Virus record (IMG/VR): IMGVR_UViG_3300024252_000004
Span: 186,001 to 250,000 of that record
Strand: one strand, 5' to 3'
DNA length: 64,000 nucleotides
The notes under the pieces were generated by a model, which searched no databases, was not told the DNA's origin, and saw nothing but the letters and a program-made list of their open reading frames with translations. Both the position numbers and the translations under genes were made by a program. Positions 20,767-59,263 of the stretch are shown here, one piece after another (position 1 is the first letter of the stretch; every line of letters starts with the position of its first letter).

Positions 20767-21162
20767 ATGAAAAGAATAAACAACATTCATTCGTTCGTTG
20801 GAACCGGCGCTTTCCAAACTGGGAAAGAGATGGCTCTTTCGAATGGAGAAGATTTTCATCTGGCGGCATTCCTTAAGCGGAGCAAGTCTCTTATCAGGAT
20901 TGGTGTCAATCGCAATGTCTCTCATGCTCGATTCATTAGGGTTGAGGATGGAGAGGTGTTGTCATTTCTTCATGCTGAAATGGATGCATTGATTGCTGCC
21001 CGTCCTGGCGACACATTGGTTGTCGTTAGATGGACGAAGGGCGGTGAAGTTTCAATGAGTCGTCCTTGCGAACACTGCCAGCGCTTCATTGCGAAGGCTG
21101 GAATCACTCGTGTCATCTATTCTGGATGGAATGGTGACTATTTCTCTGAGAGGTTCATGTGA
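20767..21162 (+). CDS. zinc-dependent cytidine/adenosine deaminase-family protein
   Basis: HAEMDAL and PCEHC motifs. Confidence 0.85.
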   Translation: MKRINNIHSFVGTGAFQTGKEMALSNGEDFHLAAFLKRSKSLIRIGVNRNVSHARFIRVEDGEVLSFLHAEMDALIAARPGDTLVVVRWTKGGEVSMSRPCEHCQRFIAKAGITRVIYSGWNGDYFSERFM

Positions 21163-39757: not shown

Positions 39758-42037
39758 ATGTCTGACGCACTAGTTAATGCTCTCCTTGATAACTCAAAGG
39801 CTGGCAACCCACGGCACTATGCCGCTGTCATTAGAGCTACGGAATCTGAAGAGGTTGCCGTTCTAAAGGCTCAGCTTGACAATCTCAAAGAGCAGATGGA
39901 GAATGCCGCAGCTTCCAGTGAAATCTTTGGAAGCATTCGCAATGCCATTCTTGGCACTGGATATGCTCGCCGCAGAAAGGCGACGAAGGATGACCTGTTC
40001 GGCAGTCTTTCTGCTGCTCCTATGGCTGGAGCTAACACAACTATCATCGATATTGTGACCTATCAGACTGCATTCATTGGTTCGTTCTCTCGTATGATCT
40101 ATGAGGGTGCCGAACTTGTTTGCAATTCGAATATCATTTCCTTTGATCAGGCTAAGACTGATCTATCGGAACAGCTTGGAGAAGACTCTAAGGTGATCGG
40201 TAAGAGTAGGGCTGATGCTATCCTTGCTAAGCTGGGGAACGCAGAGAAGGATGCGCTACAGTCTCTTGCACTGGAGCAGCAGGTAAATGCCAGCGCAGTT
40301 ACTAACTTTATGACAGGAGTTAGAAGGCTTGGTCAGGCTCTAATGATGGGTGAGGACTACTGCGCAAACATGCTTAACAGCTTTGATGGTTACTACAACC
40401 GTCTTCGTCATCGTCACACCGAGGAAGGCATTGTCGTGCAGCCTTGGCATGGAATCCCATGTCCCGTCCTCACAGACGTGGCTATCAATGTCTGGGATAA
40501 TTTGGACCGTGCCGGAGAGATTGAAGGCGGAGCTTCTACTCGTGAAGAGATTGGAGTTTATACCGTTAGGCGAGCTAAGGCTATGATTGAAGCCTGTCAT
40601 TCTCTGAGGGTTATGTTTGCCAACGCTAATGACTTCTTTGCGATGGAGCTTGAAGATATCAGAGCTACTACCACTGCCCTGCGGTCTACTGTTGTAGCAC
40701 TTGATACGATTCTTGGCAACAGTGTCTGGAAGTATTCGCCTTACAAGTTCGATGCATACGCCAAAGAGCTTTCCGATGCTTATATCGACATGAATCTGCT
40801 CGACATCCCTCCCGAGGGAAGGACTAAGGAAGCACTGGATAAGTCTGAGACTTTCGCGCTTAAGCATAGGAATGATTGTATTGCAGATATTGCAGCAATG
40901 ATTGCCTCCGAGCGTCCCGTTGATGAGATTGTTGAGGTTGCACTAGAACTGAAGCTCGAAGAGAAGGCATTCCTTCTTGAAGAGAATAGTTTCTTTGTGT
41001 GCAAGATCGGAACGGGGAACTCCTTCCTTGGTGAAGCTCCCGGTGCTATCGAAGTGATGCCGGGAGAGAAGCCTACCGCAAACCTTGACAGGATTTGGGG
41101 CTCTGGCTTTGACGAAATGCGTCATTACATCGCAGGTCTTCATACTATCAAGAAGTGGGCTCCGCTATATCTCGCAACAAGTCCAAGCTTCAGTACGGAC
41201 AAGAGCAACGTTCTTCTTGTTGGACCACAGGGTTGTGGTAAGACTGAGCTTCTGAGGGCAGTTGGTGCAGACAATGGATCCATTTCCATCTTTGCTACTG
41301 GCTCTGACTTTCTGACCTGTTGGATGGGTGAGGCTCAGAAGAACCCAAAGCGTCTCTTCAATGAGGCACGAAAGCTTCAGAAGGCTTCTGGTCGTGATGT
41401 CAATATCCTTATTGATGAGATTGATCAGGTGCTTAAGAAGGGAGATGGAAGCTCCGGTAAGGTTGACCTGTCTCTTGAGTTCCAGAACCTAATGGATGGT
41501 GTGGTTGCATACCCTGGCATTAGAATCTGGGGAGCTACTAACTTCCCCGACCTGATTCCTACTCCTATGCTTCGACGCTTTGCTCGTGTTGAGATTGTCG
41601 GAGAAATGGATCAGGAAGATAGAGAGCAGACTCTCAGATACTACATCGGCAACTTTCTTCCCACTACTGAGGATTGTGAGGATAAGTACGAAGGTTGGGC
41701 CAGAGGTCTTGAAGGTGCGACTGGAGACATTCTTCGCAAGGTTGCAGACGATGTTTGGCGCGGAACCGTTCGCTCTCTGATTGATGTGAATGAGGATCTT
41801 GCAGAAGAGATTGTCACGTACCTTGTCGATACCTACGGAGAACGCTTCTCCGCTCAGGATCTTTCTGACGAGGATAGAGAACTTATCAAGGAAATGATGG
41901 GCGAGCACAAGGTAGGTCCCCTTGTCGTACAGTCCTGTATCACTAAGCTACTTGGCAATCAGGCAATCAAGGATCAGATTGCCGGTGCCAGCAATACTTA
42001 CGCTCTCGCCAGACAGATGAAGCGTAAGAGTCAGTAA
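39758..42037 (+). CDS. classical-clade AAA+ ATPase with long N-terminal helical region
   Basis: GPQGCGKT, pore loop WMGE, ILIDEID, GATN, RRF. Confidence 0.9.
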   Translation: MSDALVNALLDNSKAGNPRHYAAVIRATESEEVAVLKAQLDNLKEQMENAAASSEIFGSIRNAILGTGYARRRKATKDDLFGSLSAAPMAGANTTIIDIVTYQTAFIGSFSRMIYEGAELVCNSNIISFDQAKTDLSEQLGEDSKVIGKSRADAILAKLGNAEKDALQSLALEQQVNASAVTNFMTGVRRLGQALMMGEDYCANMLNSFDGYYNRLRHRHTEEGIVVQPWHGIPCPVLTDVAINVWDNLDRAGEIEGGASTREEIGVYTVRRAKAMIEACHSLRVMFANANDFFAMELEDIRATTTALRSTVVALDTILGNSVWKYSPYKFDAYAKELSDAYIDMNLLDIPPEGRTKEALDKSETFALKHRNDCIADIAAMIASERPVDEIVEVALELKLEEKAFLLEENSFFVCKIGTGNSFLGEAPGAIEVMPGEKPTANLDRIWGSGFDEMRHYIAGLHTIKKWAPLYLATSPSFSTDKSNVLLVGPQGCGKTELLRAVGADNGSISIFATGSDFLTCWMGEAQKNPKRLFNEARKLQKASGRDVNILIDEIDQVLKKGDGSSGKVDLSLEFQNLMDGVVAYPGIRIWGATNFPDLIPTPMLRRFARVEIVGEMDQEDREQTLRYYIGNFLPTTEDCEDKYEGWARGLEGATGDILRKVADDVWRGTVRSLIDVNEDLAEEIVTYLVDTYGERFSAQDLSDEDRELIKEMMGEHKVGPLVVQSCITKLLGNQAIKDQIAGASNTYALARQMKRKSQ

Positions 42038-44837: not shown

Positions 44838-45506
44838 GTGAATGTGCCAAAAAAGAAATTCAGTTGTAAAAACTGTAATACGGTCACAGAAAGATATAGG
44901 AGCACGGTAAGAAATCCAGACAAAGTCTTTTGTTCTAAAGAATGTAAAGGCTCTTGGCAAAAAGGTAAGACTACCGGAAAGGATAATCCAAACTATCGCG
45001 GCGGACTACACTGCGAACAATCCTACTGCAAGTGTGGTTCTGAGAAAGACTATAGAAGTGAGCAGTGCATGAACTGTCGTTCTATCGTTTTCAATATGGA
45101 TCAAATCCTGTTGGCAATAGCGAATAGTAAGAGCTACAGTGAAGCTTCAGTCAATCTTGGAATGTCGCGAACATACCTAACGAAATATATCAAAGAGCAC
45201 AAATTAGATATAGCACACTTTAGGCCGGGAAGAAATAGGGAGATTCCTAACGAAGAGTTATTCTCAAAATCTTTTTCGAGAAGAAATAACACGGTTAAAA
45301 AAAGAATAACTAGAGATAAACTGCTTGTCAATTCCTGTTTGTGGTGTGGAATTACAGACACTTGGAATGACAAGCCTATAACATTAGAACTTGATCACAT
45401 CAATGGTGATCCTACTGATAATCGTATTGACAATTTGCGTTTACTGTGTCCTAATTGCCACAGCCAAACTCCCACGTCGAAAGGTAAAAACAGTAGAAAA
45501 AAATAG
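44838..45506 (+). CDS. free-standing HNH endonuclease
   Basis: LELDHINGDPTDNRIDNLRLLCPNCHSQT; AT-rich. Confidence 0.9.
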   Translation: MNVPKKKFSCKNCNTVTERYRSTVRNPDKVFCSKECKGSWQKGKTTGKDNPNYRGGLHCEQSYCKCGSEKDYRSEQCMNCRSIVFNMDQILLAIANSKSYSEASVNLGMSRTYLTKYIKEHKLDIAHFRPGRNREIPNEELFSKSFSRRNNTVKKRITRDKLLVNSCLWCGITDTWNDKPITLELDHINGDPTDNRIDNLRLLCPNCHSQTPTSKGKNSRKK

Positions 45507-45517
45507 GAGGTGCCGCT

Positions 45518-46167
45518 ATGTCAGGTCAGAAGACTTTTTTCACTTCTGACCTCCATTAGCTGGAGGTCACTTTTTTCATCACAATATAATTAAATATTCT
45601 AACAGACCTTATCGTGATTCGCATGGCGAGCCTGATGTGAATGCAATGAATGAGGGAATTGTTAATAACTGGAATGAAGTAGTTGGTCCTAAAGACCGAG
45701 TATTTATCCTGGGCGATGTAGCAATGGGCGGAATGTCTAAAGCTCCTTACCTCGCAGAATACCTGCGTCGTCTTAACGGTGACAAATATTTGGTTCCTGG
45801 CAACCATGATACTTACATTCTCAATAGCGAAGAATGTATGGAAGAGCTAACCTTGCTTCCTGCCGTTTACGAACTGAAGATTCCAGATGACACTCTTCCT
45901 AAGCGAAAGAATGGTCGTATGAAGCGTCAGACGATTGTTCTGTGTCACTACTCTATGAGAGTATGGCACAAAAATGGCAAGGGTGCTTGGCATCTATTCG
46001 GCCACAGTCATGGCAGCATGGATGGCATCGGACTATCTTTCGATGTTGGTTTCGACGGACCATACTCTAATCATCGCCCTATGAGTTATGAGCAGGTTCG
46101 CGACGTTATGAGTAACCGAGAAATGGCTCTACTTGATCATCACGGCGAACATACAAGCTACCATTAA
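45518..46167 (+). CDS. metallophosphoesterase interrupted by a 14-nt insertion (45557-45570); candidate translational bypass
   Basis: AGGAGG-ATG, MSGQKTFFTSDLH then TAG; resumes FFHHNIIKY...LGDV, GNHD, HY, GHSH in another frame. Confidence 0.8.
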
Positions 46168-46177
46168 GAGGTGTTCT

Positions 46178-47395
46178 ATGCAGTTCGAGGACTTCTGTAA
46201 AGCTCTCAACGAAAGCAAGTGGCGAGGCTGGATTCACGAAGTTGGATTCGGCCTCCCTTTGCAGGCTTCTTATCTCGATGTTCCTGGGGCTTCCGCTACC
46301 ATTATCAGTACAGGCTGTCTGTATGATAAAAGTGTGCAGGGTCTTGGGAGTATTCGTTCTGTAAGCAGAGAAGGCGCCACAAGGTTTGCTGCTGGCTTCA
46401 TGGAAGGTCAGTTGGGCAAGCTCCCTGAGTCTTATGAGGACCTGTTCAGCATCGCTGTGAGTGGGGCACACAAGACTGCTGAGAAGCGTGGTGATAGTCA
46501 TGCCTGGATCTCTCTCATTACTGTCTCCACCGGATTTGAGCTTGATGGAGAAGAATGGAATGTGCATGTAACCTTCGATAAGGATGAGTTCGAAGACAGA
46601 AAGGTTGCCGGTCAAGTGCTGGCACAAATCTGTCAAGACCTTATGTGTTCGGTCTTTAAGCTTGACGTTTGGACAGTCGATAGGTTCATCCGAAAGTATC
46701 GTGATGCTTCCGGCTTCTCTGTCGATGTTGTCAGTAATCATTTCCCTGGAAATTGCCTGACTCTTGAGCAGCAAATCTCTTTGGCAGGAACAGGTAAGCC
46801 TGTCTTCATCAGAGAAGGTAAGCTTGTTCGTCCGACTGACATTCTGAGAGAGAAGACCACAATCTACAGGGGTTCATTCAATCCTCCGACCAAATCTCAC
46901 GATGCTATTGGTGGCGATGCCATCTATGAAATCGTCATCTATAATGCTCGAAAGGGTATGGCCGACTTGGGAGACGTAGCACACAGAGTTAGAATGCTCA
47001 ACGCTATGGGCAAGACAGTTATGATCACCTACTCTGAGGCATTGTTTTCAGAGATTGATTTTGTCTTGAGAAGGATTGTTGACGCAAACTATAGTTATAT
47101 TGTTGGAGTTGATACTTTCAATGCAGTTGTAGACCCGAAGTGGTATGACTATTACCCTTACGAACTTGAAACTTTCAAGAACGGTAGTCGCTTTATCGTA
47201 GCTGGAAGAGACGATGCTCCGATCAAGAAAACTGTCATTGCGGAGTACATTCAATACGAAAGGCTAACCGGTGTTGAGTATGATCACGCCATTAGTTCTT
47301 CGAGAGTTAGAGGTGGAGAGAGCAATCTCTGTCCCGAATCAGTTCAGAAATACATTGCTGATAACAAGTTGATAAACTATCCCGCAAAGTCTTAG
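46178..47395 (+). CDS. NadD-like nucleotidyltransferase with CinA-like N-terminal region
   Basis: YRGSFNPPTKSH, VGVDT, ISSSRVR; N-terminal PGAS...Y...SVS pattern. Confidence 0.7.
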   Translation: MQFEDFCKALNESKWRGWIHEVGFGLPLQASYLDVPGASATIISTGCLYDKSVQGLGSIRSVSREGATRFAAGFMEGQLGKLPESYEDLFSIAVSGAHKTAEKRGDSHAWISLITVSTGFELDGEEWNVHVTFDKDEFEDRKVAGQVLAQICQDLMCSVFKLDVWTVDRFIRKYRDASGFSVDVVSNHFPGNCLTLEQQISLAGTGKPVFIREGKLVRPTDILREKTTIYRGSFNPPTKSHDAIGGDAIYEIVIYNARKGMADLGDVAHRVRMLNAMGKTVMITYSEALFSEIDFVLRRIVDANYSYIVGVDTFNAVVDPKWYDYYPYELETFKNGSRFIVAGRDDAPIKKTVIAEYIQYERLTGVEYDHAISSSRVRGGESNLCPESVQKYIADNKLINYPAKS

Positions 47396-48321: not shown

Positions 48322-49011
48322 TTAATAAGATTTGCCATCTTTATATCTTTCGCGCCTCTTATATCTTCCCATGCCTTTGTTCTTACCTTTATAAGTATCA
48401 GTCTGAGCATGACAATTTGGACAGATTAATCTAAGATTCGATAAAGAATTGTTTTCTGAGTTACCATCGATGTGATCTAATTCAATCGGCATTGGTAACT
48501 CATTCCATTCTAACAAATCGCACACAGAACATTTGCTTCCGTTGTGTTTTAAAAGATATCTTTTTCCAACTACCGCAGAAAACTTTCCAGATGCTATTCT
48601 TTTCTCAAGATCAAAATCATGCTGGCAATAGTTTGAGCAATACTTTGCAGAACCTCTCTTGGTTTTTTTGCCGCAATTTACACAATCTGATGCGGGTTTA
48701 CCATTTCTGGTGACGCCTACATTGTGAAATGAAGCAGAGCAGCTATGAGAACAAAATTTGGAATTAGCTTTAGCGTAGTTGGTGAATGAATTGCTGCAAC
48801 CTAAACAAATATATTCTACGAGAACTTCATTAAATAAACTCCTGCATTGACCTGAACAAAATGAATGCGTAAGATTTTTTCGAATGGAACGCAAAACTGA
48901 ATGCTTATTTATGCGATAAGCTTCATCGCATTGATCACACTCAAGAGTTACAATTTCTCTTGATTTGAAGTCTGATAACCACTCTCTGATGTTATCATCT
49001 GAATATTTCAT
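48322..49011 (-). CDS. free-standing HNH endonuclease with multiple Zn fingers
   Basis: IELDHIDGNSENNSLSNLRLICPNCHAQT; AT-rich; inverted, next to a tRNA. Confidence 0.9.
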   Translation of the reverse strand: MKYSDDNIREWLSDFKSREIVTLECDQCDEAYRINKHSVLRSIRKNLTHSFCSGQCRSLFNEVLVEYICLGCSNSFTNYAKANSKFCSHSCSASFHNVGVTRNGKPASDCVNCGKKTKRGSAKYCSNYCQHDFDLEKRIASGKFSAVVGKRYLLKHNGSKCSVCDLLEWNELPMPIELDHIDGNSENNSLSNLRLICPNCHAQTDTYKGKNKGMGRYKRRERYKDGKSY

Positions 49012-49024
49012 GTCTTCCTTTTAT

Positions 49025-49102
49025 GGCCGTCTAACTCAATTGGCTTAGAGTACCTACCTCGTAAGTAGGAAGTTTCCGGTTCGAGCCCGGAGTCGGCCTC
49101 CA
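49025..49102 (+). tRNA. tRNA-Thr(CGT)
   Basis: CCTAC-CTCGTAA-GTAGG, canonical T arm, CCA; one acceptor mismatch. Confidence 0.88.
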
Positions 49103-50283: not shown

Positions 50284-50316
50284 AAAAAAGGGACACTGTA
50301 ATGGTGTCCCTTTTTT
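50284..50316. terminator. intrinsic terminator
   Basis: AAAAAAGGGACAC/GTGTCCCTTTTTT. Confidence 0.8.
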
Positions 50317-50350
50317 CGTGGCCGCCGGGGAGAAAAACTTGATAGCGGAT

Positions 50351-50486
50351 TTTTCTACATTTCTCACAAGACGTTATACTAAGCCAGCAGCACGGCGCTG
50401 CAAACAACGTACAGCATCGGGCAAGCGGAAAACGAAACAAACTGTCGATAGACGAAAGTTTTCCAAATTTCCCACAGGATGTTATA
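50351..50486 (+). promoter_or_regulatory. tandem phage promoter motifs (50351-50378, 50459-50486)
   Basis: TTTTCTA-N15-GTTATA and TTTTCCA-N15-GTTATA. Confidence 0.78.
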
Positions 50487-50530
50487 CGATGGTGTCGGGT
50501 GAGCCGATAACGATTAAGGAGCGCGAAAGC

Positions 50531-50911
50531 ATGTCAAGTCGCAATGCAAAGTGGGATAAGGCGGTCAGTGATAAGACGCCTCTGAACCCAGAAGATACTC
50601 TCGCTTACTACGAGAATGTTCAGCTTGACCCCACCGCTGGTCTTTCCAGCCGTGACCGTGCTCGAATTGCTGGATGGATGAGTGCTACGAAGAATAGCTC
50701 CAACCAGCCTGATACTGTCGAGCTTTCAGATGGCGACAAGAGATACCTTGCCCGTCTGGACAAGAGAGCTAACGCTCTCCCCGCTGACAACACACAGTTT
50801 ATACAGCCGGTTGATTACTACAAGCTCCTTGGAGACGCATGGGACAATATGTACGTGTGGTTTAAGGGGAACAGTTGGCCAAAGGCCCGACCGGTTACTA
50901 CAGAGTCTTAG
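50531..50911 (+). CDS. hypothetical protein
   Basis: AAGGAG RBS before ATG 50531. Confidence 0.65.
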   Translation: MSSRNAKWDKAVSDKTPLNPEDTLAYYENVQLDPTAGLSSRDRARIAGWMSATKNSSNQPDTVELSDGDKRYLARLDKRANALPADNTQFIQPVDYYKLLGDAWDNMYVWFKGNSWPKARPVTTES

Positions 50912-50980
50912 AGAGAAGAAGGAAAGGGTTGCTATTTTGACCTTGACCAATTAATTAAAACAAAAGAAAGGAAATTACAT

Positions 50981-51448
50981 ATGTCTGCTGAATTCGATCT
51001 TCGTCCCGATGACCTCGTCATCATTCGTCTTACCCTTCGCGGTCGCGATGGCGGTGCTGCCGTCAACGTGAATGAGACCCCTACTGTTGCTGATCTCGGC
51101 CTCGGTCAGGATGCTCCTACCGTCGAGCCCCCAACGCTCGATACTGCCGAGTACGCTCGCCTGCTTTCTGCTGGCGGAAGTGATGCTGAGGCTGCCCTTC
51201 GTATGCTCGCTGAGTTTAACGAGGCAACCGCTGACTTCATGGCTGCTGGTGGAACCCCTCCTGCTGAGTCTCTGGCTCAGGCAGTGGTTGACTGGGTCGT
51301 TGAGACCCGTCCTGGCGGACACAAGTTCGTTACCACTGACTCCGCAGACGGCTACGTGATCTCCGCTCGTGAGATCAACATCCACCAGGTTAGCCTTGGT
51401 GATGATGACCGTGCCTTCCGTGTCACCGCTGTCGGTACTTGGGGCTGA
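50981..51448 (+). CDS. second Ubl-like candidate ending VGTWG
   Basis: terminal aromatic-Gly; N- and C-terminal strand patterns echo the 34061 Ubl; very biased codons; E1 two genes downstream. Confidence 0.5.
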   Translation: MSAEFDLRPDDLVIIRLTLRGRDGGAAVNVNETPTVADLGLGQDAPTVEPPTLDTAEYARLLSAGGSDAEAALRMLAEFNEATADFMAAGGTPPAESLAQAVVDWVVETRPGGHKFVTTDSADGYVISAREINIHQVSLGDDDRAFRVTAVGTWG

Positions 51449-51502
51449 TTAACTGAGCGTAAAGCTTAGTTAGTCGCGAAGGGTCAAAAATAGCTAAACA
51501 CT

Positions 51503-51540
51503 GGGGGTCGGTAGTTCGGAAGTTCTACCGACCCCCTTTG
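51503..51540 (+). terminator. intrinsic terminator
   Basis: GGGGGTCGGTAG/CTACCGACCCCC-TTTG. Confidence 0.75.
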
Positions 51541-51598
51541 TCCATTCTTCTCTAAAGAATAAAACATTAAACATAACACCAATAACCTTTACTCATAG

Positions 51599-53020
51599 GT
51601 GATTAGAATGTCCGATATTGGTAAGCTTTGGTCCACGGTAGACGTAGACCTTGAAAAGTATAAGGCCGGCACAATGCCGGAGGTTCGCAGGAGCGGCAGT
51701 TACAGTAACTGCAATTGTTCCGAGTGCCAGAGTCTTAAGGCTCTGCGTGACAATATTCTCGCCGCACGAAACGGAAGTACATTCTTCGGCATCTCCCGAG
51801 ATGTGCAGGCAAAGGTCGAAAAGGTCAAGATGTCTCTGGTCGTAGAGACTCCAGGCTTCTATAGTCTTGGCCCTATCTCGGATCAGACGAATGGTATCTT
51901 CGATACGGTCTACTTCTCCGAGCCCGGAAAGTATTCTTTCGTCAAGATTTACAAGGCCGCACGCAATGCTCCAGATGGTCTGATGCTCATTGACGATGAG
52001 ATCAGCGCTGCCTTTGGAGAGGGTGGAATTACGTCTGCTTACAGAGAGGCTTTCGGAAAGGTCTTTGTTATGGGAGAGCTTGCCGGCGATGCTTGGGGCG
52101 CTCTGAAGAATAAGATCAATCTCGCTATCCAGGGTGTTGTGCCTGAGGAAGATGAGCCTATTCTCGAAGAGGTTAACTTCGATGGAGTGTTTCTGGTCAA
52201 TGACCGATACATCCCGATGTTCTACTTCAATGACACCTTCACTATCATCACGAGTGCCGATGGTAATAGTAAGAAGTGTGAGTCCATCCCTGGTCTTCCC
52301 ACTGATGATGCGACTAAGTCGATGAACTACATCAAGAGCATCGCCAAGAAGCTTCCTAAGTGCTTCGGCTTTGCTGATGATAAGCACGCGATCCCATTCG
52401 TCTATGATACCGAGACGCATTCTCTTGCGACTGGTGTTGGGATCTCTGATGTCATTCATTGCCTTGTGAATGAGAATAAGGATAAGTTCTCTGAGGCCAT
52501 TCAGAATGTCTTTGGTCACGTTCTGAGTCCGCTTGAGTTTATTGATGCAGTGAAGCAGGACTTCGCAGTCAATGGTGCAGATGAGTTTGAGATCACCGAG
52601 TTCTGGCCTAAGCATGTTACGGCACGCTGGTCGGAGTGGGAGACTCACGATAAGCTGGACCACTCTGTTACCTTCTCTGGCTATCTTGCAGGAGTTAGTT
52701 TCCAGGGTAAGCCTCTGGTTGGGAAGAATGGTTCTCAGCGTGGAGACATCCACATTCGTTTCAACCCTGAGACTGGCCGTCCTTGGCTTATGAAGTCTCC
52801 CTGGTGTCAGCGAATCAACTCTTGGTCTAAGAAGAATCATGGAGTTATCGATCAGCTTTATGATATCTGGGCTCTCGCTGACTGGCTGTCCGGTCCCTTC
52901 GCTGAAAAGTGCAACCTCAACATGAAGTCTGCTCCTTGTGTCTTTGCTGGAAACAAGATGGTTGACCGAAAGAAGAGTGCTCTTGACAAGCTTCGTGCCA
53001 AGCTTAACGCTGTAGGCTGA
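51599..53020 (+). CDS. hypothetical protein, paralog of 42051-43550, conserved Cys (possible E2-like)
   Basis: YIPMF, TEFWP, WCQRINSWSK, DWLSGP. Confidence 0.8.
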   Translation: MIRMSDIGKLWSTVDVDLEKYKAGTMPEVRRSGSYSNCNCSECQSLKALRDNILAARNGSTFFGISRDVQAKVEKVKMSLVVETPGFYSLGPISDQTNGIFDTVYFSEPGKYSFVKIYKAARNAPDGLMLIDDEISAAFGEGGITSAYREAFGKVFVMGELAGDAWGALKNKINLAIQGVVPEEDEPILEEVNFDGVFLVNDRYIPMFYFNDTFTIITSADGNSKKCESIPGLPTDDATKSMNYIKSIAKKLPKCFGFADDKHAIPFVYDTETHSLATGVGISDVIHCLVNENKDKFSEAIQNVFGHVLSPLEFIDAVKQDFAVNGADEFEITEFWPKHVTARWSEWETHDKLDHSVTFSGYLAGVSFQGKPLVGKNGSQRGDIHIRFNPETGRPWLMKSPWCQRINSWSKKNHGVIDQLYDIWALADWLSGPFAEKCNLNMKSAPCVFAGNKMVDRKKSALDKLRAKLNAVG

Positions 53021-53066
53021 AGCTTAGTTTCCCCGCTACATAACACTAACTATACAGGTGTAACAA

Positions 53067-53858
53067 ATGCTACGTAGACCCACTATTGCCATCGTTGGCT
53101 GTGGCTTTATCGGCTCGCATCTTGCAGACGAGCTTGCTAAGCTTTTCTACTCTCAGGATGTATTCCCTTTCCACTTCCTCTTCATTGACTATGATGAATG
53201 GGAGGACCGGAACGCTGCGAACCAGAATGTGTCTTACGAGATCGCAAATAGTGAAGAGCCTAAGGCTATCACTTGCGCTCGGTATGCCAATCAGTACCCG
53301 AACAACGAGGGCAAAGCTGTCGTTGAGAAGCTGACTCATGCAAATGCTGCTGAGCTTCTAAAGGATGCTGTGCTTGTCATTGATGCAGTGGATAACATTC
53401 CTACTCGTCAGATCCTTTGGGCTATGGGTATTGGTGGAGCTACTGCTCCCTGTATGCATGTTGGTATCTCGCGGAAGGGTGACGGTATCATCAACTGGTC
53501 TTCGACCAAGCTTGATACCTTCCCTTTCAACCCGGTTGCAATGGCCGGTCGTGATCTCGCTGAGCAGGATGTCAAGGAGCCGCCTTGTGAAATGTATAAG
53601 TATCGTGCCTCTGGCATGGTTCTTTTCCAGGCAGCAGCTAAGGCTGTATCCTTCTTCTTCGGAAAGGATCCTTGGAATTATCTTGAGTGTGATGGGGTCA
53701 CTGAGCGTGGAACCATGACTTGCTGGACTACCAGTGTTGAGAACGGAGCGAAGCTTCTGACAGATGATATGTATCTGGATATGGAAGAGGGCTTTTTCCC
53801 TGTTGATTGGCGGGACGTTGACTTCCACGCTATCAACGCAGAAACGGACGAGGACTAA
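53067..53858 (+). CDS. second ThiF/E1-like activating enzyme
   Basis: VGCGFIGS, DYDEWEDRNAANQ, VIDAVDN, PPCE. Confidence 0.88.
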   Translation: MLRRPTIAIVGCGFIGSHLADELAKLFYSQDVFPFHFLFIDYDEWEDRNAANQNVSYEIANSEEPKAITCARYANQYPNNEGKAVVEKLTHANAAELLKDAVLVIDAVDNIPTRQILWAMGIGGATAPCMHVGISRKGDGIINWSSTKLDTFPFNPVAMAGRDLAEQDVKEPPCEMYKYRASGMVLFQAAAKAVSFFFGKDPWNYLECDGVTERGTMTCWTTSVENGAKLLTDDMYLDMEEGFFPVDWRDVDFHAINAETDED

Positions 53859-53860
53859 AC

Positions 53861-55486
53861 ATGACTAATCGTAATTGGGGCAGGTCGAGTACGCCCACAA
53901 AGAAGACTGCTCACGCAAAGATCACGATCTACAGTGGCGAGATTCCAGAGGATGATAATACTGATGATTCCACTTGGGAGGTCGAGGGTGAGTATTACGT
54001 CGGAGAGCAGAGGCTCGGACAGGCTATTGACAATGCTGTTGATGTCCTTCAGGTCTACTCCGATGTAATCAAGGATGACAACAAGTCGTACAAGATGCCT
54101 ACTGGTAAGGACACTATTCCTAACCTCTTCATGAAGAAGGGAAGTGTTCCTACTAAGAGGACTTGGACCCGAAATGTTGCTTGCTGTGCATACAATGCAA
54201 CTGACGGCTACATGAAGCACTGGCTTGGTCGCCAGTTTGATCGGGATGATAGGGATTGGTACTGTCGCCACCATTTGGTGACCCCTGATGGTCTCCCTCA
54301 GGAGTTCAGTTTCACTGTGCTTCAGCAGCTTGTTGAGGCTTATGACTGTGGTATCAAGGGGATTCAGGTTCCACGAACCAGTCGTCGCTTTGATGAGCAG
54401 AAAATCTTCATTGAGGCTCTCGGCGCAAACCCTCTCTTTAAGGTGAATGGAAACACCACCAACGAAGAGGCTTATGAGGTTCTTTATCCCGAGGCAGCTA
54501 TTCCTATCTTCCTTGAGAAGGAAGGTCTGGATGATACTCCGAAGGGTCGTGCCGAGCTTAAGAAGCGTGTCTTTGACACTTGGCGATTCGAGTGTATTGA
54601 TATGCCCGATCTCGGTGCAGTCATCATGCGGCAGTTTTCTTTGAGCATGGTAGGACACAATGGTGGTTCTAACTACTATGGTCCTCGCTCTAAGTTCTCG
54701 GTGAATGATGATACTGATAAGTGGCTGATGGCTGTGCAGTTTGCAGAGCTTAAGGACATCGACTATCTTGTTCCGCTGGAGCTTGAGGCATACAAGGAGT
54801 ATGACGGTACTCTGATCTATGATTGGTGGGGAATCAAGTGCGATGCTTCTAAGACTCTTAGAGGTTACGCTCCCAAGTATCAGAGCACCAGTTCTTACCG
54901 AAGCGGCTATGGCGGCGGCAGCAGCTACAACGGTGATACTTCCGGCTCTGGCAAGGGAAAGACTGATTACTTTGTTCCTCCACTTCGGGCTCTTGGATAC
55001 GATGCTTCACAGATTCTTCTGATGTCTTGGAAGACTGCTCGGACCCTAAAGGAAGGTAAGATTTCTGCGAAGGGTACGGTCATTAAGAGTGATGGTACTT
55101 GGCTGTCTGAGAAGGATAAGAGTTCTTCCTCTAAGGATGGAGGACAGATGAAGCTTATCACGGACAAGGAGAATGTTTCGACAGAGGTGAAAGTCCTCGC
55201 TTACCCGCCTCTGTGTGAGGGTTGTCAAAAGAATCCAGGCGATACGGTCTATGATATCAATGATAACCTAAAGTGTGAGAACTGTGGTGATCTTGTCGAG
55301 GCGTACCTCGTTCCCAGGAACAACCTTCTGAGCGGCTGGACTGCTGTTAGCGAGCGAGCACTGTCTCAGCTTGATGACGACAGTGATGACGACCTTGAGG
55401 ATTGGGAATACCAGTGGCTTCTTGGGGGCGATGACACCGATGAGATAGATTTCAGTGGAGACTCTGGGAACATTCACCTTCCTTGA
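53861..55486 (+). CDS. hypothetical protein (541 aa) with Gly/Ser/Tyr linker, C-terminal Zn ribbon and acidic tail
   Basis: CEGC...CENCG; follows E1. Confidence 0.8.
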   Translation: MTNRNWGRSSTPTKKTAHAKITIYSGEIPEDDNTDDSTWEVEGEYYVGEQRLGQAIDNAVDVLQVYSDVIKDDNKSYKMPTGKDTIPNLFMKKGSVPTKRTWTRNVACCAYNATDGYMKHWLGRQFDRDDRDWYCRHHLVTPDGLPQEFSFTVLQQLVEAYDCGIKGIQVPRTSRRFDEQKIFIEALGANPLFKVNGNTTNEEAYEVLYPEAAIPIFLEKEGLDDTPKGRAELKKRVFDTWRFECIDMPDLGAVIMRQFSLSMVGHNGGSNYYGPRSKFSVNDDTDKWLMAVQFAELKDIDYLVPLELEAYKEYDGTLIYDWWGIKCDASKTLRGYAPKYQSTSSYRSGYGGGSSYNGDTSGSGKGKTDYFVPPLRALGYDASQILLMSWKTARTLKEGKISAKGTVIKSDGTWLSEKDKSSSSKDGGQMKLITDKENVSTEVKVLAYPPLCEGCQKNPGDTVYDINDNLKCENCGDLVEAYLVPRNNLLSGWTAVSERALSQLDDDSDDDLEDWEYQWLLGGDDTDEIDFSGDSGNIHLP

Positions 55487-55529
55487 CAATTCGTTACGGT
55501 TCAAGCAGTAGACGTAACTCTTGATTAAC

Positions 55530-55564
55530 AAGAAGAGGGTAGACCAAGTGTCTATCCTCTTCTT
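55530..55564. terminator. hairpin terminator
   Basis: AAGAAGAGGGTAGAC/GTCTATCCTCTTCTT. Confidence 0.7.
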
Positions 55565-55636
55565 GCCGTTTGATTCTGCCCCGCCCACCGGGGAGAAAAA
55601 GCTGATTCGCGGCTCTTGGCGGGGGTTAGTTTAAAT

Positions 55637-55664
55637 TTTTCTGACTTTCCCATAGGACGTTATA
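55637..55664 (+). promoter_or_regulatory. phage promoter motif
   Basis: TTTTCTG-N15-GTTATA. Confidence 0.75.
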
Positions 55665-55693: not shown

Positions 55694-56212
55694 ATGAAGA
55701 AGATATGCTACATTATGCGGGGAGTTCCAGGTTCTGGAAAAAGTACTGCCGCCCGTTCAATTGCTCGAACAGCACCGCCCGGAAAGGTTGGTGAGTTCTG
55801 GCATCACATTGGCGAGTTTGGTCCTGATCAGCGTTGCGCTCTATACTTCGGTGAGCCTGACGGTGATATCTTTTCTGCCGTTCATTCTGCGGACGATTAC
55901 TTTCTCAACGAGGAAGGGGTCTATGTGTTCAACAGGATGGCACTAGGAAAGGTTCACTCCAAGAACTTCAAGTCTTTCAGGGAGTCTTGTGAGCTTGACA
56001 TTCCTATTGTCATATGTGACAACACGAACCTTAGGCGGAAAGAGTGGAAGAAGTACGCAGCCTGCGGGGATAACCGAGGATATATCGTCGCCTTTGTAGA
56101 GATGCCTCTTCCAAATCCTCAAGTTGCAGCAGAGAGAAACTCACACGGAGTTCCACTTGCTGACATCAAACGAATGATTAAGAATTGGGAACCATTTAAT
56201 GGGAAAATATAA
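55694..56212 (+). CDS. P-loop polynucleotide kinase-like protein (AAA_33 / N4BP2-like)
   Basis: MRGVPGSGKST, SADDYF, DNTN, RNSHGVP. Confidence 0.85.
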   Translation: MKKICYIMRGVPGSGKSTAARSIARTAPPGKVGEFWHHIGEFGPDQRCALYFGEPDGDIFSAVHSADDYFLNEEGVYVFNRMALGKVHSKNFKSFRESCELDIPIVICDNTNLRRKEWKKYAACGDNRGYIVAFVEMPLPNPQVAAERNSHGVPLADIKRMIKNWEPFNGKI

Positions 56213-56978: not shown

Positions 56979-58166
56979 ATGGATGTTAAGCTGCCGGAAA
57001 ATCATTCTGAATTTGATATCAGAAAGCATTCCATCATCGTTGGGCTTGGAGGTTCCAAGTCATATGGGACAAACCATCCTCTTAGTGATACTGATTGGAA
57101 GGGTGTGCTCGTAGCGCCTCGCCGTTACAATATGACGGATCTGTATAACTTCGATCAAACTACTTGGAAGTCTGAGGAGAAATCTGGCAGGCTCTCTGAG
57201 CAGGCAGGTCTTGAGGAAGCAGACGAAGAGGGTGTTATCTATGGTTTCAATAAATTCGTTAAGCTATGCGCTGCGTGCAATCCGAACGTAATCGAACTTC
57301 TCTTTCTTCGAGAAGAAGATTACGCTATCGTAACTGACGAAGGCAGATACCTTATCGAGAACAGGGATCTGTTCCTTTCTCAGAGAGCACTGTATACCTT
57401 CACGGGTTACGCTATGTCTCAGCTTAAGAGGATTCGCACTCACAAGAGTTGGATCGATAACCCACCCACACATAAGCCTACTCGGGAAGAGTTTGGTCTG
57501 CCAGAGCACAGGGCATTGCCAAACGATCAGTTGCAGGCTGCTCGAAAGCTTGTTACTCGTCACCTATCGTCGCTTGCTCCGTGGCTTCTTGATGCAAACA
57601 ATGAACACAAGGAAGTCTTTTACGAAGGGCTCTACAACATTGTGGGTCTGCTTGCCGAAGAGTCGGGAGTATCTCTACCAGAGTGCGATAGTTGGCTTGA
57701 GATTGAAGAGGTAGCTGAGAACTGTGCTGCTAAGACTCTTGGTTTCGACTCTAATTTTATGGATTATCTCCGTAGAGAAAAGGTATACGGTCAGAGGCGG
57801 CAGCAGTACAAGCAGTATACTTCTTGGCTTAAGAACAGAAATCCTGCAAGGGCAGAGATCGAGTCTCGATACGGCTACGATTGTAAACATGCGATGCACC
57901 TTGTCAGACTTCTTAGGATGGGAGAAGAGATTCTTCTTACGGGAAACATGAATGTGTACCGCCCTGACAGGAAGGAGCTTCTTGAGATCCGCAATGGTTC
58001 TTGGAAATATGATTACCTTGTCGAGTGGGGCGATGCCAAGGTCGAAGCCCTCAATCAGATGGTAAGAGAAGGCGCGGCTGTTGTGCCAAAGACTCCGAAG
58101 CTGGCTGAGATTGCAGAAGTCTCAATGGAAGTTAAGGAAAGGTTCCTCGCGAGAGTTGGAGAATAA
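56979..58166 (+). CDS. Pol-beta superfamily nucleotidyltransferase (YcgL/RlaP type)
   Basis: GGSKSYG...SDTDWKGV, CNPNVIELL, YDCKHAMHLVRLL. Confidence 0.85.
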   Translation: MDVKLPENHSEFDIRKHSIIVGLGGSKSYGTNHPLSDTDWKGVLVAPRRYNMTDLYNFDQTTWKSEEKSGRLSEQAGLEEADEEGVIYGFNKFVKLCAACNPNVIELLFLREEDYAIVTDEGRYLIENRDLFLSQRALYTFTGYAMSQLKRIRTHKSWIDNPPTHKPTREEFGLPEHRALPNDQLQAARKLVTRHLSSLAPWLLDANNEHKEVFYEGLYNIVGLLAEESGVSLPECDSWLEIEEVAENCAAKTLGFDSNFMDYLRREKVYGQRRQQYKQYTSWLKNRNPARAEIESRYGYDCKHAMHLVRLLRMGEEILLTGNMNVYRPDRKELLEIRNGSWKYDYLVEWGDAKVEALNQMVREGAAVVPKTPKLAEIAEVSMEVKERFLARVGE

Positions 58167-58169
58167 AGT

Positions 58170-58661
58170 ATGACTACGGCAATCTATGCAGGATCATTTG
58201 ATCCGTTTACCTTTGGCCACCTATCAATCGTTACTGCTGCGGCAAGAATGTTTGACGAAGTGCTGGTACTTGTAGCAGATAATCCTGAGAAGGAATGTCT
58301 GTTCTCTCCAGACGAAAGAAAGGACCTAATCCATACCGTAATTAGGGATGGATTTAAAGGGCTTGGCACCAACGTTAGGGCGGTGAAGTACAGCGGATAC
58401 ATTGTTGATTTTGCTAATGTAGTTGGTGCCGAAGTCTTAGTGAGAGGCATTCGTGATGCAAGTGATGTTGTGTACGAAATGAATGTTGCCGAGATCAATT
58501 CAGCTTTTGCGCCAGGTATTCAAACAGTTTTCCTTCCTGCTAATCGCTCCTTGTCAGAGGTTAGTTCGAGCGAGGTAAAGCGTAGGTTTGCCGCAGGAGA
58601 AAGTATTAACTATTACTGCCCTCCACAAATCGTTAGAGCAATGAAAGTAAAGGCAGAGTAA
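58170..58661 (+). CDS. coaD: phosphopantetheine adenylyltransferase
   Basis: AIYAGSFDPFTFGH, VRGIR..SD..YE, VSSSEVK. Confidence 0.92.
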   Translation: MTTAIYAGSFDPFTFGHLSIVTAAARMFDEVLVLVADNPEKECLFSPDERKDLIHTVIRDGFKGLGTNVRAVKYSGYIVDFANVVGAEVLVRGIRDASDVVYEMNVAEINSAFAPGIQTVFLPANRSLSEVSSSEVKRRFAAGESINYYCPPQIVRAMKVKAE

Positions 58662-59263
58662 TGTATGTAGTTGGCGTAACCGGAGGCATTGGTTCTGGAA
58701 AATCTACTGTATGTAGAGTATTGGCTGAGCGATTTCAGATCCCTTTCATCTATGTTGATAAGATTTCGAGAGAGATCGTGCAGCCGGGGATGCCTCTTAA
58801 CGTTGAGATCCGTGAAGTGTTCGGGGATGAAGCCATGCTTTCCGATGGAAACATCAACAGAGCATACTTTAGAGCTATGATTATCGCGGACCCAGAGCAG
58901 AAGGCACTTGTTGATAAGACTTTCTATCCTCACATGAAGAATGAGATCGATAGGAAGCTTGCAAATCTAAAGGAGAACGGCTTCTTGGTTGTCGGTATTG
59001 AGAATGCTATGATGATTGAGTTCGGAGCAACGTCTTACGTCAACAAGGTTGTGGTTGTTGCTTGTTCTGAGGAGTCTCAGCTTCGCAGAGTGATGGAGCG
59101 AGATAATCAAACTGAGGAGTCGGCAAGGGGAATGATGAAATTGCAGATGCCTCTTGAGGAAAAGAGGAAACATGCAGACCTTGTCATCACAAACGATGGC
59201 ACGCTTGCAGAGCTACGCGATCAAATCAATTCTCTTTATGAAAGTCTCCCGAGAATCAAATGA
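58661..59263 (+). CDS. coaE: dephospho-CoA kinase
   Basis: VGVTGGIGSGKST, FG...DGNINR, QMPLEEKRKHAD. Confidence 0.92.
   Translation: MYVVGVTGGIGSGKSTVCRVLAERFQIPFIYVDKISREIVQPGMPLNVEIREVFGDEAMLSDGNINRAYFRAMIIADPEQKALVDKTFYPHMKNEIDRKLANLKENGFLVVGIENAMMIEFGATSYVNKVVVVACSEESQLRRVMERDNQTEESARGMMKLQMPLEEKRKHADLVITNDGTLAELRDQINSLYESLPRIK

What the first reader, a model, noticed from the sequence alone, without database searches (positions are those of the whole stretch)
50351..55564. Second, divergent Ubl-E1 cassette
Seen: tandem promoters precede a highly codon-biased 155-aa protein ending VGTWG, an internal terminator, a 473-aa protein with a conserved Cys, a second ThiF/E1 (PPCE) and a 541-aa Zn-ribbon protein, then a terminator. 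The 155-aa protein echoes the 94-aa Ubl (IRLTLRGRDG vs LNITWGGENG; FRVTAVGTWG vs VFLRPKTPFG) with an insertion. It already ends in Gly, consistent with no JAB gene in this unit. Inference: a second orthogonal conjugation pathway with the modifier made in excess of the enzymes.
Basis: partly seen in the sequence, partly recalled or inferred. Interest (0 to 1): 0.78.

Follow-up and report, generated by a model that had tools for sequence, protein, structure and literature searches.

The report
Jumbo-phage ubiquitin-like tagging cassette
A 395-kb phage carries a self-contained operon in which an abundant, nearly lysine-free 155-residue protein with an invariant C-terminal glycine is paired with an E1-type activating enzyme and two unknown cysteine proteins; it looks like a virus-encoded ubiquitin-like tagging pathway built from mostly new parts.

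Summary
The sequence features are real: one transcription unit, 50290-55565, in a 395-kb jumbo phage.

The core idea holds. All 23 homologues of the 155-aa protein keep RVTAV[G/A]TWG at the C-terminus; 12 end at the Gly and 11 carry 1-3 extra residues. A complex model puts this tail in the E1 adenylation site (score 0.76, best control 0.01). The four-gene order is kept in all ten related loci with DNA.

High modifier expression is supported by codon bias (9th of 403 ORFs), a hairpin kept in 9 of 10 loci, and the only metatranscriptome pieces.

It is not a diverged copy of the first cassette. Only the two E1s are related (27%), the 94-aa/155-aa echo is not significant, and a 99%-complete relative has this cassette alone, with no JAB.

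The unit probably supplies its own peptidase: the 541-aa core has an invariant Cys/His pair and weakly resembles papain-fold Gly-Gly peptidases and a deubiquitinase.

The beta-grasp fold is only weakly supported. The 470-aa protein and the target are unknown.

The parts
50290..50316 (+). Upstream boundary. A 7-bp hairpin (GGGACAC / GTGTCCC) followed by T6 and preceded by A6. It looks like a bidirectional terminator closing the preceding unit.
   Evidence: Read directly. The terminator scan does not list it.
50365..50379 (+). Promoter-type motif, copy 1 (CACAAGACGTTATAC).
   Evidence: 7 copies in the window, all on the + strand, 0.29 expected..
50473..50487 (+). Promoter-type motif, copy 2 (CACAGGATGTTATAC). 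This is the only tandem pair in the window.
50531..50911 (+). Accessory 126-aa gene of unknown function with an AAGGAG ribosome-binding site. It belongs to a weakly conserved family.
   Evidence: present upstream of the modifier gene in 7 of 10 loci; absent in L008, L009 and L012. No family hit.
50981..51448 (+). The 155-aa modifier or carrier protein. It has an invariant C-terminal RVTAV[G/A]TWG, one Lys only, and is acidic and strongly codon-biased.
   Evidence: 23 homologues. (AF2 pLDDT 87.6). (weak beta-grasp hits). (tail in the E1 site). (Nc 36.6, rank 9 of 403). (Lys 0.65% against a genome mean of 6.9%). (the only RNA-library contigs).
51503..51536 (+). 12-bp G+C-rich hairpin in a 159-nt spacer, followed only by TTT. 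Likely a partial terminator, attenuator or mRNA 3'-end stabiliser.
   Evidence: z = -5.0; an equivalent strong hairpin with an unrelated sequence in 9 of 10 loci.
51608..53020 (+). 470-aa protein (alternative GTG start at 51599 gives 473 aa) of unknown fold. Its C-terminal block is invariant: S-x-W-C400-Q-R ... W406 ... D415-Q ... W421 ... D425-W-L-x-G-P ... E433 ... G448. It is a candidate thioester carrier (E2/E3-like) or adaptor.
   Evidence: No hits. About 50 clusters in 1.84 billion representatives. None in 185,579 species genomes.
53067..53858 (+). 263-aa ThiF-type E1 adenylating enzyme. It has G11xG13xxG16, D41/D43, K66, D106xxD109-N110 and R114. The crossover loop EPPC174EMYKYR carries a candidate catalytic Cys (or Tyr).
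53861..55486 (+). 541-aa protein. Its conserved core (about residues 95-335) has an invariant C109 (VAxCAYNAT) and H120, and H266 (GHNGG) is invariant in the eight full-length homologues. A low-complexity linker follows, then a C4 zinc ribbon (C452, C455, C472, C475) and an acidic tail. It is a candidate papain-fold peptidase for tail trimming or deconjugation.
   Evidence: AF2 pLDDT 69; every hit spanning 103-304 is a papain-fold peptidase, led by Josephin-2 with ubiquitin and C39 double-glycine peptidases, at Z 2.5-4.0.
55529..55565 (+). Strong intrinsic terminator (16-bp stem) closing the unit. The next promoter motif is at 55651.

Best explanation
This is a self-contained, phage-encoded, E1-dependent tagging module that works like a ubiquitin-like conjugation pathway but is built mostly from unrelated parts.

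Proposed mechanism:
1. Two promoters drive very high synthesis of the 155-aa protein. A conserved hairpin after its gene lets only a fraction of transcription reach the three enzyme genes.
2. Where the precursor carries 1-3 residues after the terminal Gly, they are trimmed. The most likely enzyme is the Cys/His core of the 541-aa protein.
3. The 263-aa ThiF-type E1 binds the modifier, threads the ...VGTWG tail into its ATP site and adenylates Gly155.
4. The acyl group is probably passed to the crossover-loop Cys174, or to a Tyr in that loop, and then to the invariant Cys400 of the 470-aa protein or Cys109 of the 541-aa protein.
5. It finally reaches an amine, most likely a protein lysine, on a phage or host target.

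The near absence of lysine in the modifier would keep it from tagging itself.

Shown in silico: the conserved terminal Gly, the E1 motifs, E1-tail docking, synteny, and the expression signals. Inferred: every chemical step after binding, the roles of the 470-aa and 541-aa proteins, and the target.
For: - C-terminus: RVTAV[G/A]TWG is invariant in 23 homologues down to 43% identity. 12 end at the Gly and 11 have variable tails of 1-3 residues.
- E1: a complete adenylation signature plus a near-invariant crossover-loop Cys.
- Complex model of an E1 dimer plus the modifier: ipSAE 0.76 (median of 3 runs) against a best control of 0.01. In the tool's calibration, 58 of 80 solved complexes and 2 of 110 mismatched pairs reached the mark. 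Modifier residues 149-155 touch E1 residues 11, 13-16, 107-111, 114 and 151-165.
- Gene order: modifier, then about 470-526 aa, then ThiF, then about 447-541 aa, in all ten related loci with DNA. Two further places without DNA keep the order with one extra gene of about 495 aa.
- Excess modifier: tandem promoter motif; hairpin kept in 9 of 10 loci with unrelated stems; codon bias 9th of 403 ORFs; the only two contigs of the one RNA library that holds any of it both lie inside the modifier gene.
- Lysine: 1.3% on average in the modifier family against 6.9% genome-wide, and normal in the enzymes.
- 541-aa core: an invariant Cys and His, and all core-spanning fold hits are papain-fold peptidases, including a deubiquitinase and Gly-Gly-specific C39 peptidases.
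- 470-aa family: an invariant Cys.
- A 99%-complete relative carries only this cassette and no JAB, although its modifier has a one-residue tail.
Against: - No biochemical evidence exists for adenylation, thioester formation or any conjugate.
- The modifier's beta-grasp fold is only weakly supported. VIA Z is 4-4.7 and only when the three-helix insert is skipped. Foldseek, Atlas and BFVD give nothing significant.
- No UBC-type E2 was detected. The PF00179 genome search is uninformative because its controls did not ring.
- The papain-fold assignment is weak: Z <= 4.0, and the loops with C109/H120 and H266 have pLDDT < 50.
- One of the three complex runs failed (score 0.01), and a pass can reflect the model's memory of MoeB-MoaD-type complexes.
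- The RNA evidence is two low-depth contigs, and DNA carry-over cannot be excluded.
- Lysine depletion may partly follow from the gene's high G+C content (58.5%).
Confidence: 0.6

Rival explanations
1. The modifier is activated by the E1 but joined to something other than a protein: a lipid head-group (as Atg8 is joined to phosphatidylethanolamine), a cell-wall or small-molecule amine, or a nucleotide or nucleic acid. The 470-aa and 541-aa proteins would then be the transferase and the processing or release peptidase.
For: - Everything up to activation is the same as in the main explanation.
- The aromatic-Gly terminus with short tails removed by a papain-fold protease is the Atg8/Atg4 pattern. 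This is from my own knowledge of that pathway and was not tested here.
- No recognisable E2 is present.
- Very high modifier expression would suit a stoichiometric coat or anchor.
Against: - No lipid-, sugar- or nucleotide-handling domain was detected in the cassette.
- Lysine depletion of the modifier is explained more simply by a lysine-directed pathway.
- No membrane segment was noted, though this was not analysed formally.
Confidence: 0.15
2. It is a sulfur-carrier system of the ThiS/MoaD/TtuB type. The E1 adenylates the terminal Gly, which becomes a thiocarboxylate that donates sulfur for a cofactor or a thio-nucleoside.
For: - The best named matches of the E1 are ThiF and MoeB adenylyltransferases.
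- The terminal Gly is invariant.
- 5 of the 11 tails contain Cys, reminiscent of CysO/QbsE-type carriers (from my own knowledge).
- The phage invests in translation and tRNA functions: tRNAs and TilS.
Against: - All ThiF and MoeB matches are far below the curated cut-offs (34 bits against 275).
- The terminus is W-G, not G-G. The protein is 155 aa with a helical insert, not about 66-100 aa.
- The genome has no rhodanese and no cysteine desulfurase.
- The only PP-loop enzyme is a TilS, which does not depend on sulfur.
- Structural-protein-level expression and lysine depletion are not expected of a catalytic sulfur carrier.
- Two large conserved Cys proteins would be left without a role.
Confidence: 0.08
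3. The 155-aa protein is an abundant structural or scaffolding protein of the virion or of an intracellular phage structure. The E1 and its partners serve to cross-link it covalently in place, as enzyme-made 'chainmail', rather than to signal.
For: - Its codon bias is in the range of the most biased genes of the genome, which cluster in one region at about 140-157 kb.
- It is made far in excess of the enzymes.
- The cassette is confined to very large phages.
Against: - This is a special case of the main explanation (target = virion) rather than a true alternative.
- The cassette lies among nucleotide, RNA-repair and translation genes, not structural genes.
- No virion proteomics exists for these uncultured phages.
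Confidence: 0.12
4. The resemblance is superficial. The four genes are co-transcribed but functionally unrelated, and the ThiF protein acts on something else.
For: Three of the four core proteins have no detectable family.
Against: - The gene order is invariant across homologues down to 23-43% identity.
- The terminal Gly is invariant.
- The E1-tail docking is specific and well above the controls.
Confidence: 0.03

Closest known systems
Bacterial ubiquitination-like antiphage operons: Bil (Ubl, E1, E2, JAB), Bub (PMC11601596) and type II CBASS Cap2/Cap3
   Same: - A small protein with a reactive C-terminal Gly, sometimes made as a precursor.
- A ThiF-fold E1 with a catalytic residue in the crossover loop.
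- A dedicated peptidase, all in one operon.
- The E1 gives weak matches to PADLOC E1-E2 (Cap2-like) models (best E 1.1e-06).
   Different: - It is encoded by a virus, not by the host's defence island.
- No UBC-fold E2 and no JAB were detected.
- The partner proteins (470 aa and 541 aa) belong to no known family.
- The modifier is 155 aa with a three-helix insert and ends W-G.
- The modifier is expressed at very high level.
ThiF-ThiS and MoeB-MoaD adenylyltransferase / sulfur-carrier pairs
   Same: - The E1 adenylation domain and its motifs.
- The predicted way the carrier's C-terminal tail enters the ATP site.
   Different: - All matches are far below the curated cut-offs.
- There is no CxxC zinc site in the E1 alignment, no G-G terminus and no sulfur-transfer partner in the genome.
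- Two extra conserved Cys proteins are present.
The JAB / Ubl-like / ThiF cassette of the same phage (window 33665-36552), of the prokaryotic JAB-E1-Ubl type described by Iyer, Burroughs and Aravind 2006 (PMC1779556, listed but not read)
   Same: - A small first protein ending in Gly.
- A large unknown protein just before a short ThiF.
- The same strand and the same genome.
   Different: - Only the ThiF proteins are related (27% identity).
- E1-1 lacks the crossover-loop Cys segment.
- Cassette 1 has a Prok-JAB; this one has none.
- The 94-aa/155-aa and 459-aa/473-aa pairs show no similarity.
- The two cassettes occur independently.
Atg8/Atg12 conjugation with the Atg4 protease and Atg7 E1 (an analogy from my own knowledge, not tested here)
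   Same: - An aromatic-Gly C-terminus.
- Short C-terminal tails removed by a papain-fold cysteine protease.
- A non-canonical homodimeric E1 whose catalytic Cys sits in the crossover loop.
   Different: - No sequence relationship was detected.
- The setting is a prokaryotic virus.
- The target is unknown.
- The modifier is twice the size.
C39 double-glycine peptidases (PCAT1, ComA) and the Josephin deubiquitinases
   Same: - They are the best structural matches to the 541-aa core, residues 103-304.
- The order is Cys first, His later.
- They cleave after Gly-Gly, or after the terminal Gly of ubiquitin.
   Different: - Z is only 2.5-4.0.
- There is no Pfam Peptidase_C39 or Josephin hit in any of 13 family members.
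- The active-site loops are poorly modelled.
- The core is fused to a zinc ribbon and an acidic tail.

Membership tests
Ubiquitin-like protein conjugation system (E1 / E2 / peptidase acting on a Ubl) | The modifier has an exposed or processable C-terminal glycine. | tested here: met
   G155 is invariant in 23 homologues. 12 end there and 11 have tails of 1-3 residues.
Ubiquitin-like protein conjugation system (E1 / E2 / peptidase acting on a Ubl) | The modifier has the beta-grasp (ubiquitin) fold. | tested here: inconclusive
   - The AF2 model is confident (pLDDT 87.6).
- Of the 14 VIA hits that span both ends of the model, 10 are beta-grasp domains of the ubiquitin or SSL type (Fubi, Get5 UBL, TBCB, PB1, RA, talin, kindlin, SSL7), but at Z 4.0-4.7.
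- Foldseek PDB and AFDB, the Atlas and BFVD give nothing significant.
Ubiquitin-like protein conjugation system (E1 / E2 / peptidase acting on a Ubl) | An E1 with a ThiF-fold adenylation domain and intact ATP/Mg motifs. | tested here: met
   Pfam ThiF at 47.4 bits against a cut-off of 28.1. GxGxxG, D41, D43, K66, DxxDN and R114 are invariant.
Ubiquitin-like protein conjugation system (E1 / E2 / peptidase acting on a Ubl) | The E1 binds the modifier with its C-terminal tail in the adenylation site. | tested here: met
   Prediction only; ipSAE 0.76 against a best control of 0.01 (mark reached by 58 of 80 solved complexes and 2 of 110 mismatched pairs). Tail residues 149-155 lie against E1 residues 11-16 and 107-114.
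Ubiquitin-like protein conjugation system (E1 / E2 / peptidase acting on a Ubl) | An E2 with the UBC fold and a catalytic Cys. | tested here: not met
   - No UQ_con or PADLOC E2 match for the 470-aa or 541-aa proteins or their family members.
- The 541-aa model gives no UBC hit.
- The 470-aa protein could not be modelled, so a cryptic E2-like domain is not excluded.
Ubiquitin-like protein conjugation system (E1 / E2 / peptidase acting on a Ubl) | Covalent conjugates of the modifier with targets are formed. | not testable with these tools
   This needs biochemistry or mass spectrometry.
Prokaryotic JAB-E1-Ubl cassettes | A JAB/JAMM metallopeptidase encoded with the E1 and Ubl. | tested here: not met
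   no Prok-JAB in the unit; none in the whole genome of the 99%-complete relative G001.
ThiS/MoaD-type sulfur-carrier systems | A small carrier (about 66-100 aa) ending Gly-Gly, an E1 matching ThiF/MoeB equivalog models, and sulfur-transfer partners. | tested here: not met
   - The protein is 155 aa and ends W-G.
- ThiF and MoeB models score 16-34 bits against cut-offs of 152-376.
- The genome has no rhodanese and no cysteine desulfurase.
- The only PP-loop protein is TilS.
Papain-fold cysteine peptidases (clan CA; C39 or Josephin-like), for the 541-aa protein | A conserved catalytic Cys followed by a conserved His. | tested here: met
   - C109 and H120 are invariant in 13 sequences.
- H266 is invariant in the 8 full-length sequences.
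- Both are kept in the distant 723-aa homologue.
Papain-fold cysteine peptidases (clan CA; C39 or Josephin-like), for the 541-aa protein | A papain-like fold with the Cys at the start of the core helix. | tested here: inconclusive
   - all hits spanning 103-304 are papain-fold peptidases, but at Z 2.5-4.0.
- the segments 109-126 and 260-269 have pLDDT < 50.
- no Pfam peptidase match.

The most novel reading that the evidence does not exclude
Very large phages encode their own complete protein-tagging pathway that arose independently of UBC-type E2s and JAB peptidases. An abundant, lysine-free modifier is activated by a minimal E1 and passed through two previously unknown cysteine enzymes onto host or phage proteins. 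One purpose could be to hand the tagged proteins to the phage's own classical AAA unfoldase, or to ClpP in relatives; another could be to mask them from host defence. That would be a viral counterpart of ubiquitination in the prokaryotic world, with two new enzyme families.
Probability: 0.35. Interest if true: 0.85.

Novelty: new variant of a known kind. Interest (0 to 1): 0.72.

Why it matters
Ubiquitin-like conjugation in prokaryotes has so far been characterised as a host tool: sulfur transfer, and the antiphage Bil, Bub and CBASS systems. My searches of the held literature found no description of a phage-encoded counterpart.

A conserved cassette that is restricted to phages would show that viruses of bacteria use the same chemistry for their own ends. 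It would also add two uncharacterised cysteine-protein families, each an entry point to new transfer or isopeptidase chemistry. One is a candidate Gly-specific papain-fold peptidase fused to a zinc ribbon. The other is a 470-aa protein with an invariant W-C-Q motif.

The system is compact and should be directly testable by co-expressing four genes. The strong signature of excess modifier suggests a stoichiometric, possibly structural or masking, role rather than a purely signalling one.

Tried and rejected
SEARCHES THAT FOUND NOTHING
- Family searches: Pfam, PHROGs, PADLOC and NCBIfam give nothing for the 155-aa, 470-aa, 541-aa and 126-aa proteins. Scanning all family members individually gives only zinc-ribbon noise.
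- Profile searches of PDB sequences with the 470-aa and 541-aa families give nothing.
- ESM Atlas feature and shape searches give only sub-threshold leads. Its own models of the 470-aa and 541-aa proteins are poor (pLDDT 0.31-0.32).
- Deposited phage genomes: megablast of the region and tblastn of the E1, modifier and 541-aa protein find no match in 50,697 records.
- IMG/VR holds only one other record.
- 185,579 species genomes hold none.
- The metagenome scan returned only 8 loci.

QUERIES THAT COULD NOT BE MADE
- A structure of the 470-aa family could not be made.

IDEAS TESTED AND DROPPED
- Paralogy of the two cassettes is rejected except for the E1s.
- Sulfur-carrier reading: the PP-loop gene in the window turned out to be TilS.
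- The UQ_con genome search is uninformative because its controls did not ring.
- The promoter motif is not shared by the more distant relatives, so it cannot be used as comparative evidence.
- The Rctr197k neighbourhood of the E1-1 relative showed nothing relevant.

Full report
CONTEXT

The window is bases 186001-250000 of a 395,127-bp virus record rated 100% complete, that is, a jumbo phage. Nearly all genes are on the + strand. No deposited phage genome resembles the region.

ANATOMY OF THE UNIT

Reading the DNA together with the scans gives one cleanly bounded transcription unit:
- A hairpin plus T6 at 50290-50316 ends the preceding unit.
- Two copies of CACARGAYGTTATAC follow, at 50365 and 50473.
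- The motif occurs seven times in the window, always on the + strand and always between genes, against 0.29 expected by chance. It therefore behaves like a phage promoter.
- This is the only tandem pair, and the next copy (55651) sits just after the unit's terminator.

The genes, in order:
- The 155-aa gene (50981-51448).
- A 159-nt spacer with a 12-bp G+C hairpin (51503-51536; fold z = -5.0).
- A 470-aa gene (51608-53020). The ATG start agrees with the identical 470-aa database protein.
- The 263-aa ThiF gene (53067-53858).
- The 541-aa gene (53861-55486).
- A 16-bp-stem terminator (55529-55565).

THE 155-aa PROTEIN

- 23 homologues were found, all unnamed and from metagenomes, several on contigs of 157-420 kb.
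- The alignment shows an invariant C-terminal R-V-T-A-V-[G/A]-T-W-G.
- Twelve sequences stop at that Gly. Eleven continue for one to three variable residues (C, GC, E, R, RC, Y, LKA, VCA).
- This is the pattern of a ubiquitin-like precursor whose reactive Gly is exposed by trimming.
- The AF2 model is confident (pLDDT 87.6): two N-terminal strands, three helices (55-109), then C-terminal strands leading to a flexible tail.
- Foldseek finds no significant match in the PDB, AFDB clusters or BFVD, and the shape search of the ESM Atlas finds none either.
- With VIA-align, 14 hits span both ends of the model. Ten are ubiquitin-type or SSL-type beta-grasps (Fubi, Get5 UBL, TBCB Ubl, PB1, NORE1 RA, talin F0F1, kindlin F0, SSL7). 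Three are Nudix folds. All are at Z 4.0-4.7 only.
- I therefore call the fold 'beta-grasp-like core with a helical insert', weakly supported.

Two further properties point to an abundant modifier:
- The gene is 9th of 403 ORFs in codon bias.
- The family is almost lysine-free, with a mean of 1.3% and 0-2 Lys in most members. The genome mean is 6.9%, and the three enzyme families have 4.7-8.5%.

THE E1

- Pfam ThiF matches the N-terminal half.
- The alignment of ten orthologues keeps GxGxxG, D41/D43, K66, DxxDN and R114.
- It also keeps a near-invariant EPPCEMYKYR in the crossover loop, the position of the reactive residue in ThiF/MoeB and other E1s. In Bub E1s that residue is a tyrosine (PMC11601596), so a Cys or Tyr intermediate is open here.
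- The 190-aa E1 of the first cassette lacks this segment.
- The complex prediction of an E1 dimer with the modifier scored 0.76 (median of three runs) against 0.01 for the best control. In the tool's calibration, 58 of 80 solved complexes and 2 of 110 mismatched pairs reached the mark.
- The confident interface joins modifier residues 149-155 to the E1 glycine-rich loop (11, 13-16), the DxxDN motif (107-111), R114 and the crossover loop (151-165).
- One of the three runs failed, and such a pass may partly reflect known MoeB-MoaD-type complexes.

THE TWO LARGE PROTEINS

470-aa family:
- It has about 50 clusters among 1.84 billion representatives.
- It has none in 185,579 species genomes.
- In 38 sequences with a mean column identity of 22%, the invariant residues are all in a C-terminal block: C400, Q401, W406, D415, W421, W426, P430 and G448.
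- Its fold is unknown.

541-aa family:
- It has a conserved core of about 190-240 residues with an invariant C109 (VAxCAYNAT), H120 and H266 (GHNGG).
- A variable linker, a C4 zinc ribbon and an acidic tail follow.
- A distant 723-aa homologue keeps only the core.
- The AF2 model is moderate (pLDDT 69), and the loops bearing the invariant residues are poorly defined.
- Even so, every VIA hit that spans residues 103-304 is a papain-fold cysteine peptidase. The list is led by Josephin-2 bound to ubiquitin and three C39 double-glycine peptidases, at Z 2.5-4.0.
- This fits a built-in peptidase that trims the tails and perhaps removes the tag.

CONSERVATION AND INDEPENDENCE

- The order modifier, about 470-526 aa, ThiF of about 243-259 aa, about 447-541 aa is kept in all ten related loci with DNA. 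Two further places without DNA keep it with one extra gene of about 495 aa.
- The 126-aa gene is present in seven loci and absent in three.
- A strong hairpin follows the modifier gene in nine of the ten loci, and the stems have unrelated sequences.
- In the one metatranscriptome that holds any of the 5.3 kb, both matching contigs (no mismatches) lie inside the modifier gene.
- If coverage were uniform, the chance of that is roughly (468/5301)^2, about 0.008. This is my estimate; depth is low and DNA carry-over cannot be excluded.

RELATION TO THE FIRST CASSETTE

- Cassette 1 is Prok-JAB, a 94-aa protein, a 459-aa protein and ThiF-190.
- Only the ThiF proteins are related (27% identity, E 1e-10).
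- The other pairs show nothing.
- E1-1 is 49% identical to an E1 of Virus Rctr197k, so it is closer to other phages' E1s than to E1-2.
- The 99%-complete 332-kb relative G001 has one ThiF, of the cassette-2 type, and no JAB at all. Yet its modifier ends TWG-R.
- The unit is therefore an independent, self-sufficient module, not a diverged duplicate.

RIVALS

- A sulfur-carrier role is unlikely. The terminus is W-G. ThiF and MoeB models score far below their cut-offs. The genome has no rhodanese or cysteine desulfurase. Its only PP-loop enzyme is TilS.
- A non-protein acceptor (Atg8-like lipidation or similar) cannot be excluded.
- A structural cross-linking role is a special case of the main reading.

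VERDICT

The sequence observations are largely correct, and the central inference holds up in silico: an E1 acting on an abundant C-terminal-Gly protein. The duplication and paralogy story does not hold, and the 'no peptidase needed' argument needs revising. The system works like a ubiquitin-like conjugation pathway. It fails the membership tests for a UBC-type E2 and a JAB peptidase, and the beta-grasp test is inconclusive. I file it as a new, phage-restricted variant of E1-dependent tagging with two unknown enzyme families.

Noticed in passing
window 231, 30014, 38965, 50365, 50473, 55651, 61472 (+ strand): A promoter-type motif, CACARGAYGTTATA[C/G/A], recurs seven times, always intergenic and on the + strand (0.29 expected). 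It is probably the promoter of one temporal gene class of this phage. It is not shared by more distant relatives.
   Followed up: partly
It belongs to a weakly conserved family with an internal repeat-like pattern (LS..D...I..W...SE.L). It is present in 7 of 10 related loci and has no family match.
   Followed up: partly
window 39758-42037: A 759-aa ATPase of the classical AAA clade (best matches CdvC, Cdc48, PAN and the Pup-proteasome ATPase, all below cut-offs). It lies 9 kb upstream, and a similar AAA gene lies upstream of the cassette in L007, L008 and L010. The relative L003 has a ClpP gene 5 kb downstream. These could be partners for a protein tag; untested.
   Followed up: partly
window 33665-36552: The first cassette: Prok-JAB (125 aa), a 94-aa protein ending in Gly, a 459-aa unknown and a minimal 190-aa ThiF without the crossover-loop Cys. 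Its E1 has a 49%-identical relative in Virus Rctr197k (KX853510) and a 33% relative in a 595-kb uncultured phage (LR756511).
   Followed up: partly
window 21159-21800; tRNA genes at 6536, 7869, 25265, 28615, 49025, 61514: A TilS (lysidine synthetase) N-domain protein and six tRNA genes. These include an unusual tRNA-Asn with anticodon ATT and one with an undetermined anticodon. Related phages carry IF3, RF1, a GlnRS-like fragment and thioredoxin next to the cassette (L003, L006).
   Followed up: no
genome G000:C1 about 140000-165000 (outside the window): The most codon-biased ORFs cluster at about 140-157 kb, and several of the most lysine-poor ORFs lie at about 145-165 kb. If these are virion genes, lysine avoidance in abundant phage proteins might relate to lysine-directed tagging by the phage or by the host. 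Some minus-strand ORFs in the list may be spurious.
   Followed up: no
window 48322-49011 (- strand) and 44838-45506: Two HNH-type endonuclease genes. The minus-strand one is Cys-rich (HNH-like motif seen only in the translation) and abuts tRNA-Thr (49025-49102). They may be homing elements.
   Followed up: no
window 46133-47395, 55694-56212, 56979-58166, 58661-59263: Genes flanking the cassette: an NMN/NaMN adenylyltransferase-like protein, an AAA_33 kinase, an RlaP nucleotidyltransferase (RNA-repair type) and a dephospho-CoA kinase. The AAA_33 and RlaP (or RNA ligase) neighbours are syntenic in several related loci.
   Followed up: no
A1 alignment, C-terminal tails (P0008, P0009, P0012, P0014, P0018, P0022): Six of the eleven post-Gly tails contain a cysteine (VCA, C, GC, C, C, RC). 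The reason is unknown. It recalls Cys-adduct sulfur carriers but could be chance.
   Followed up: no
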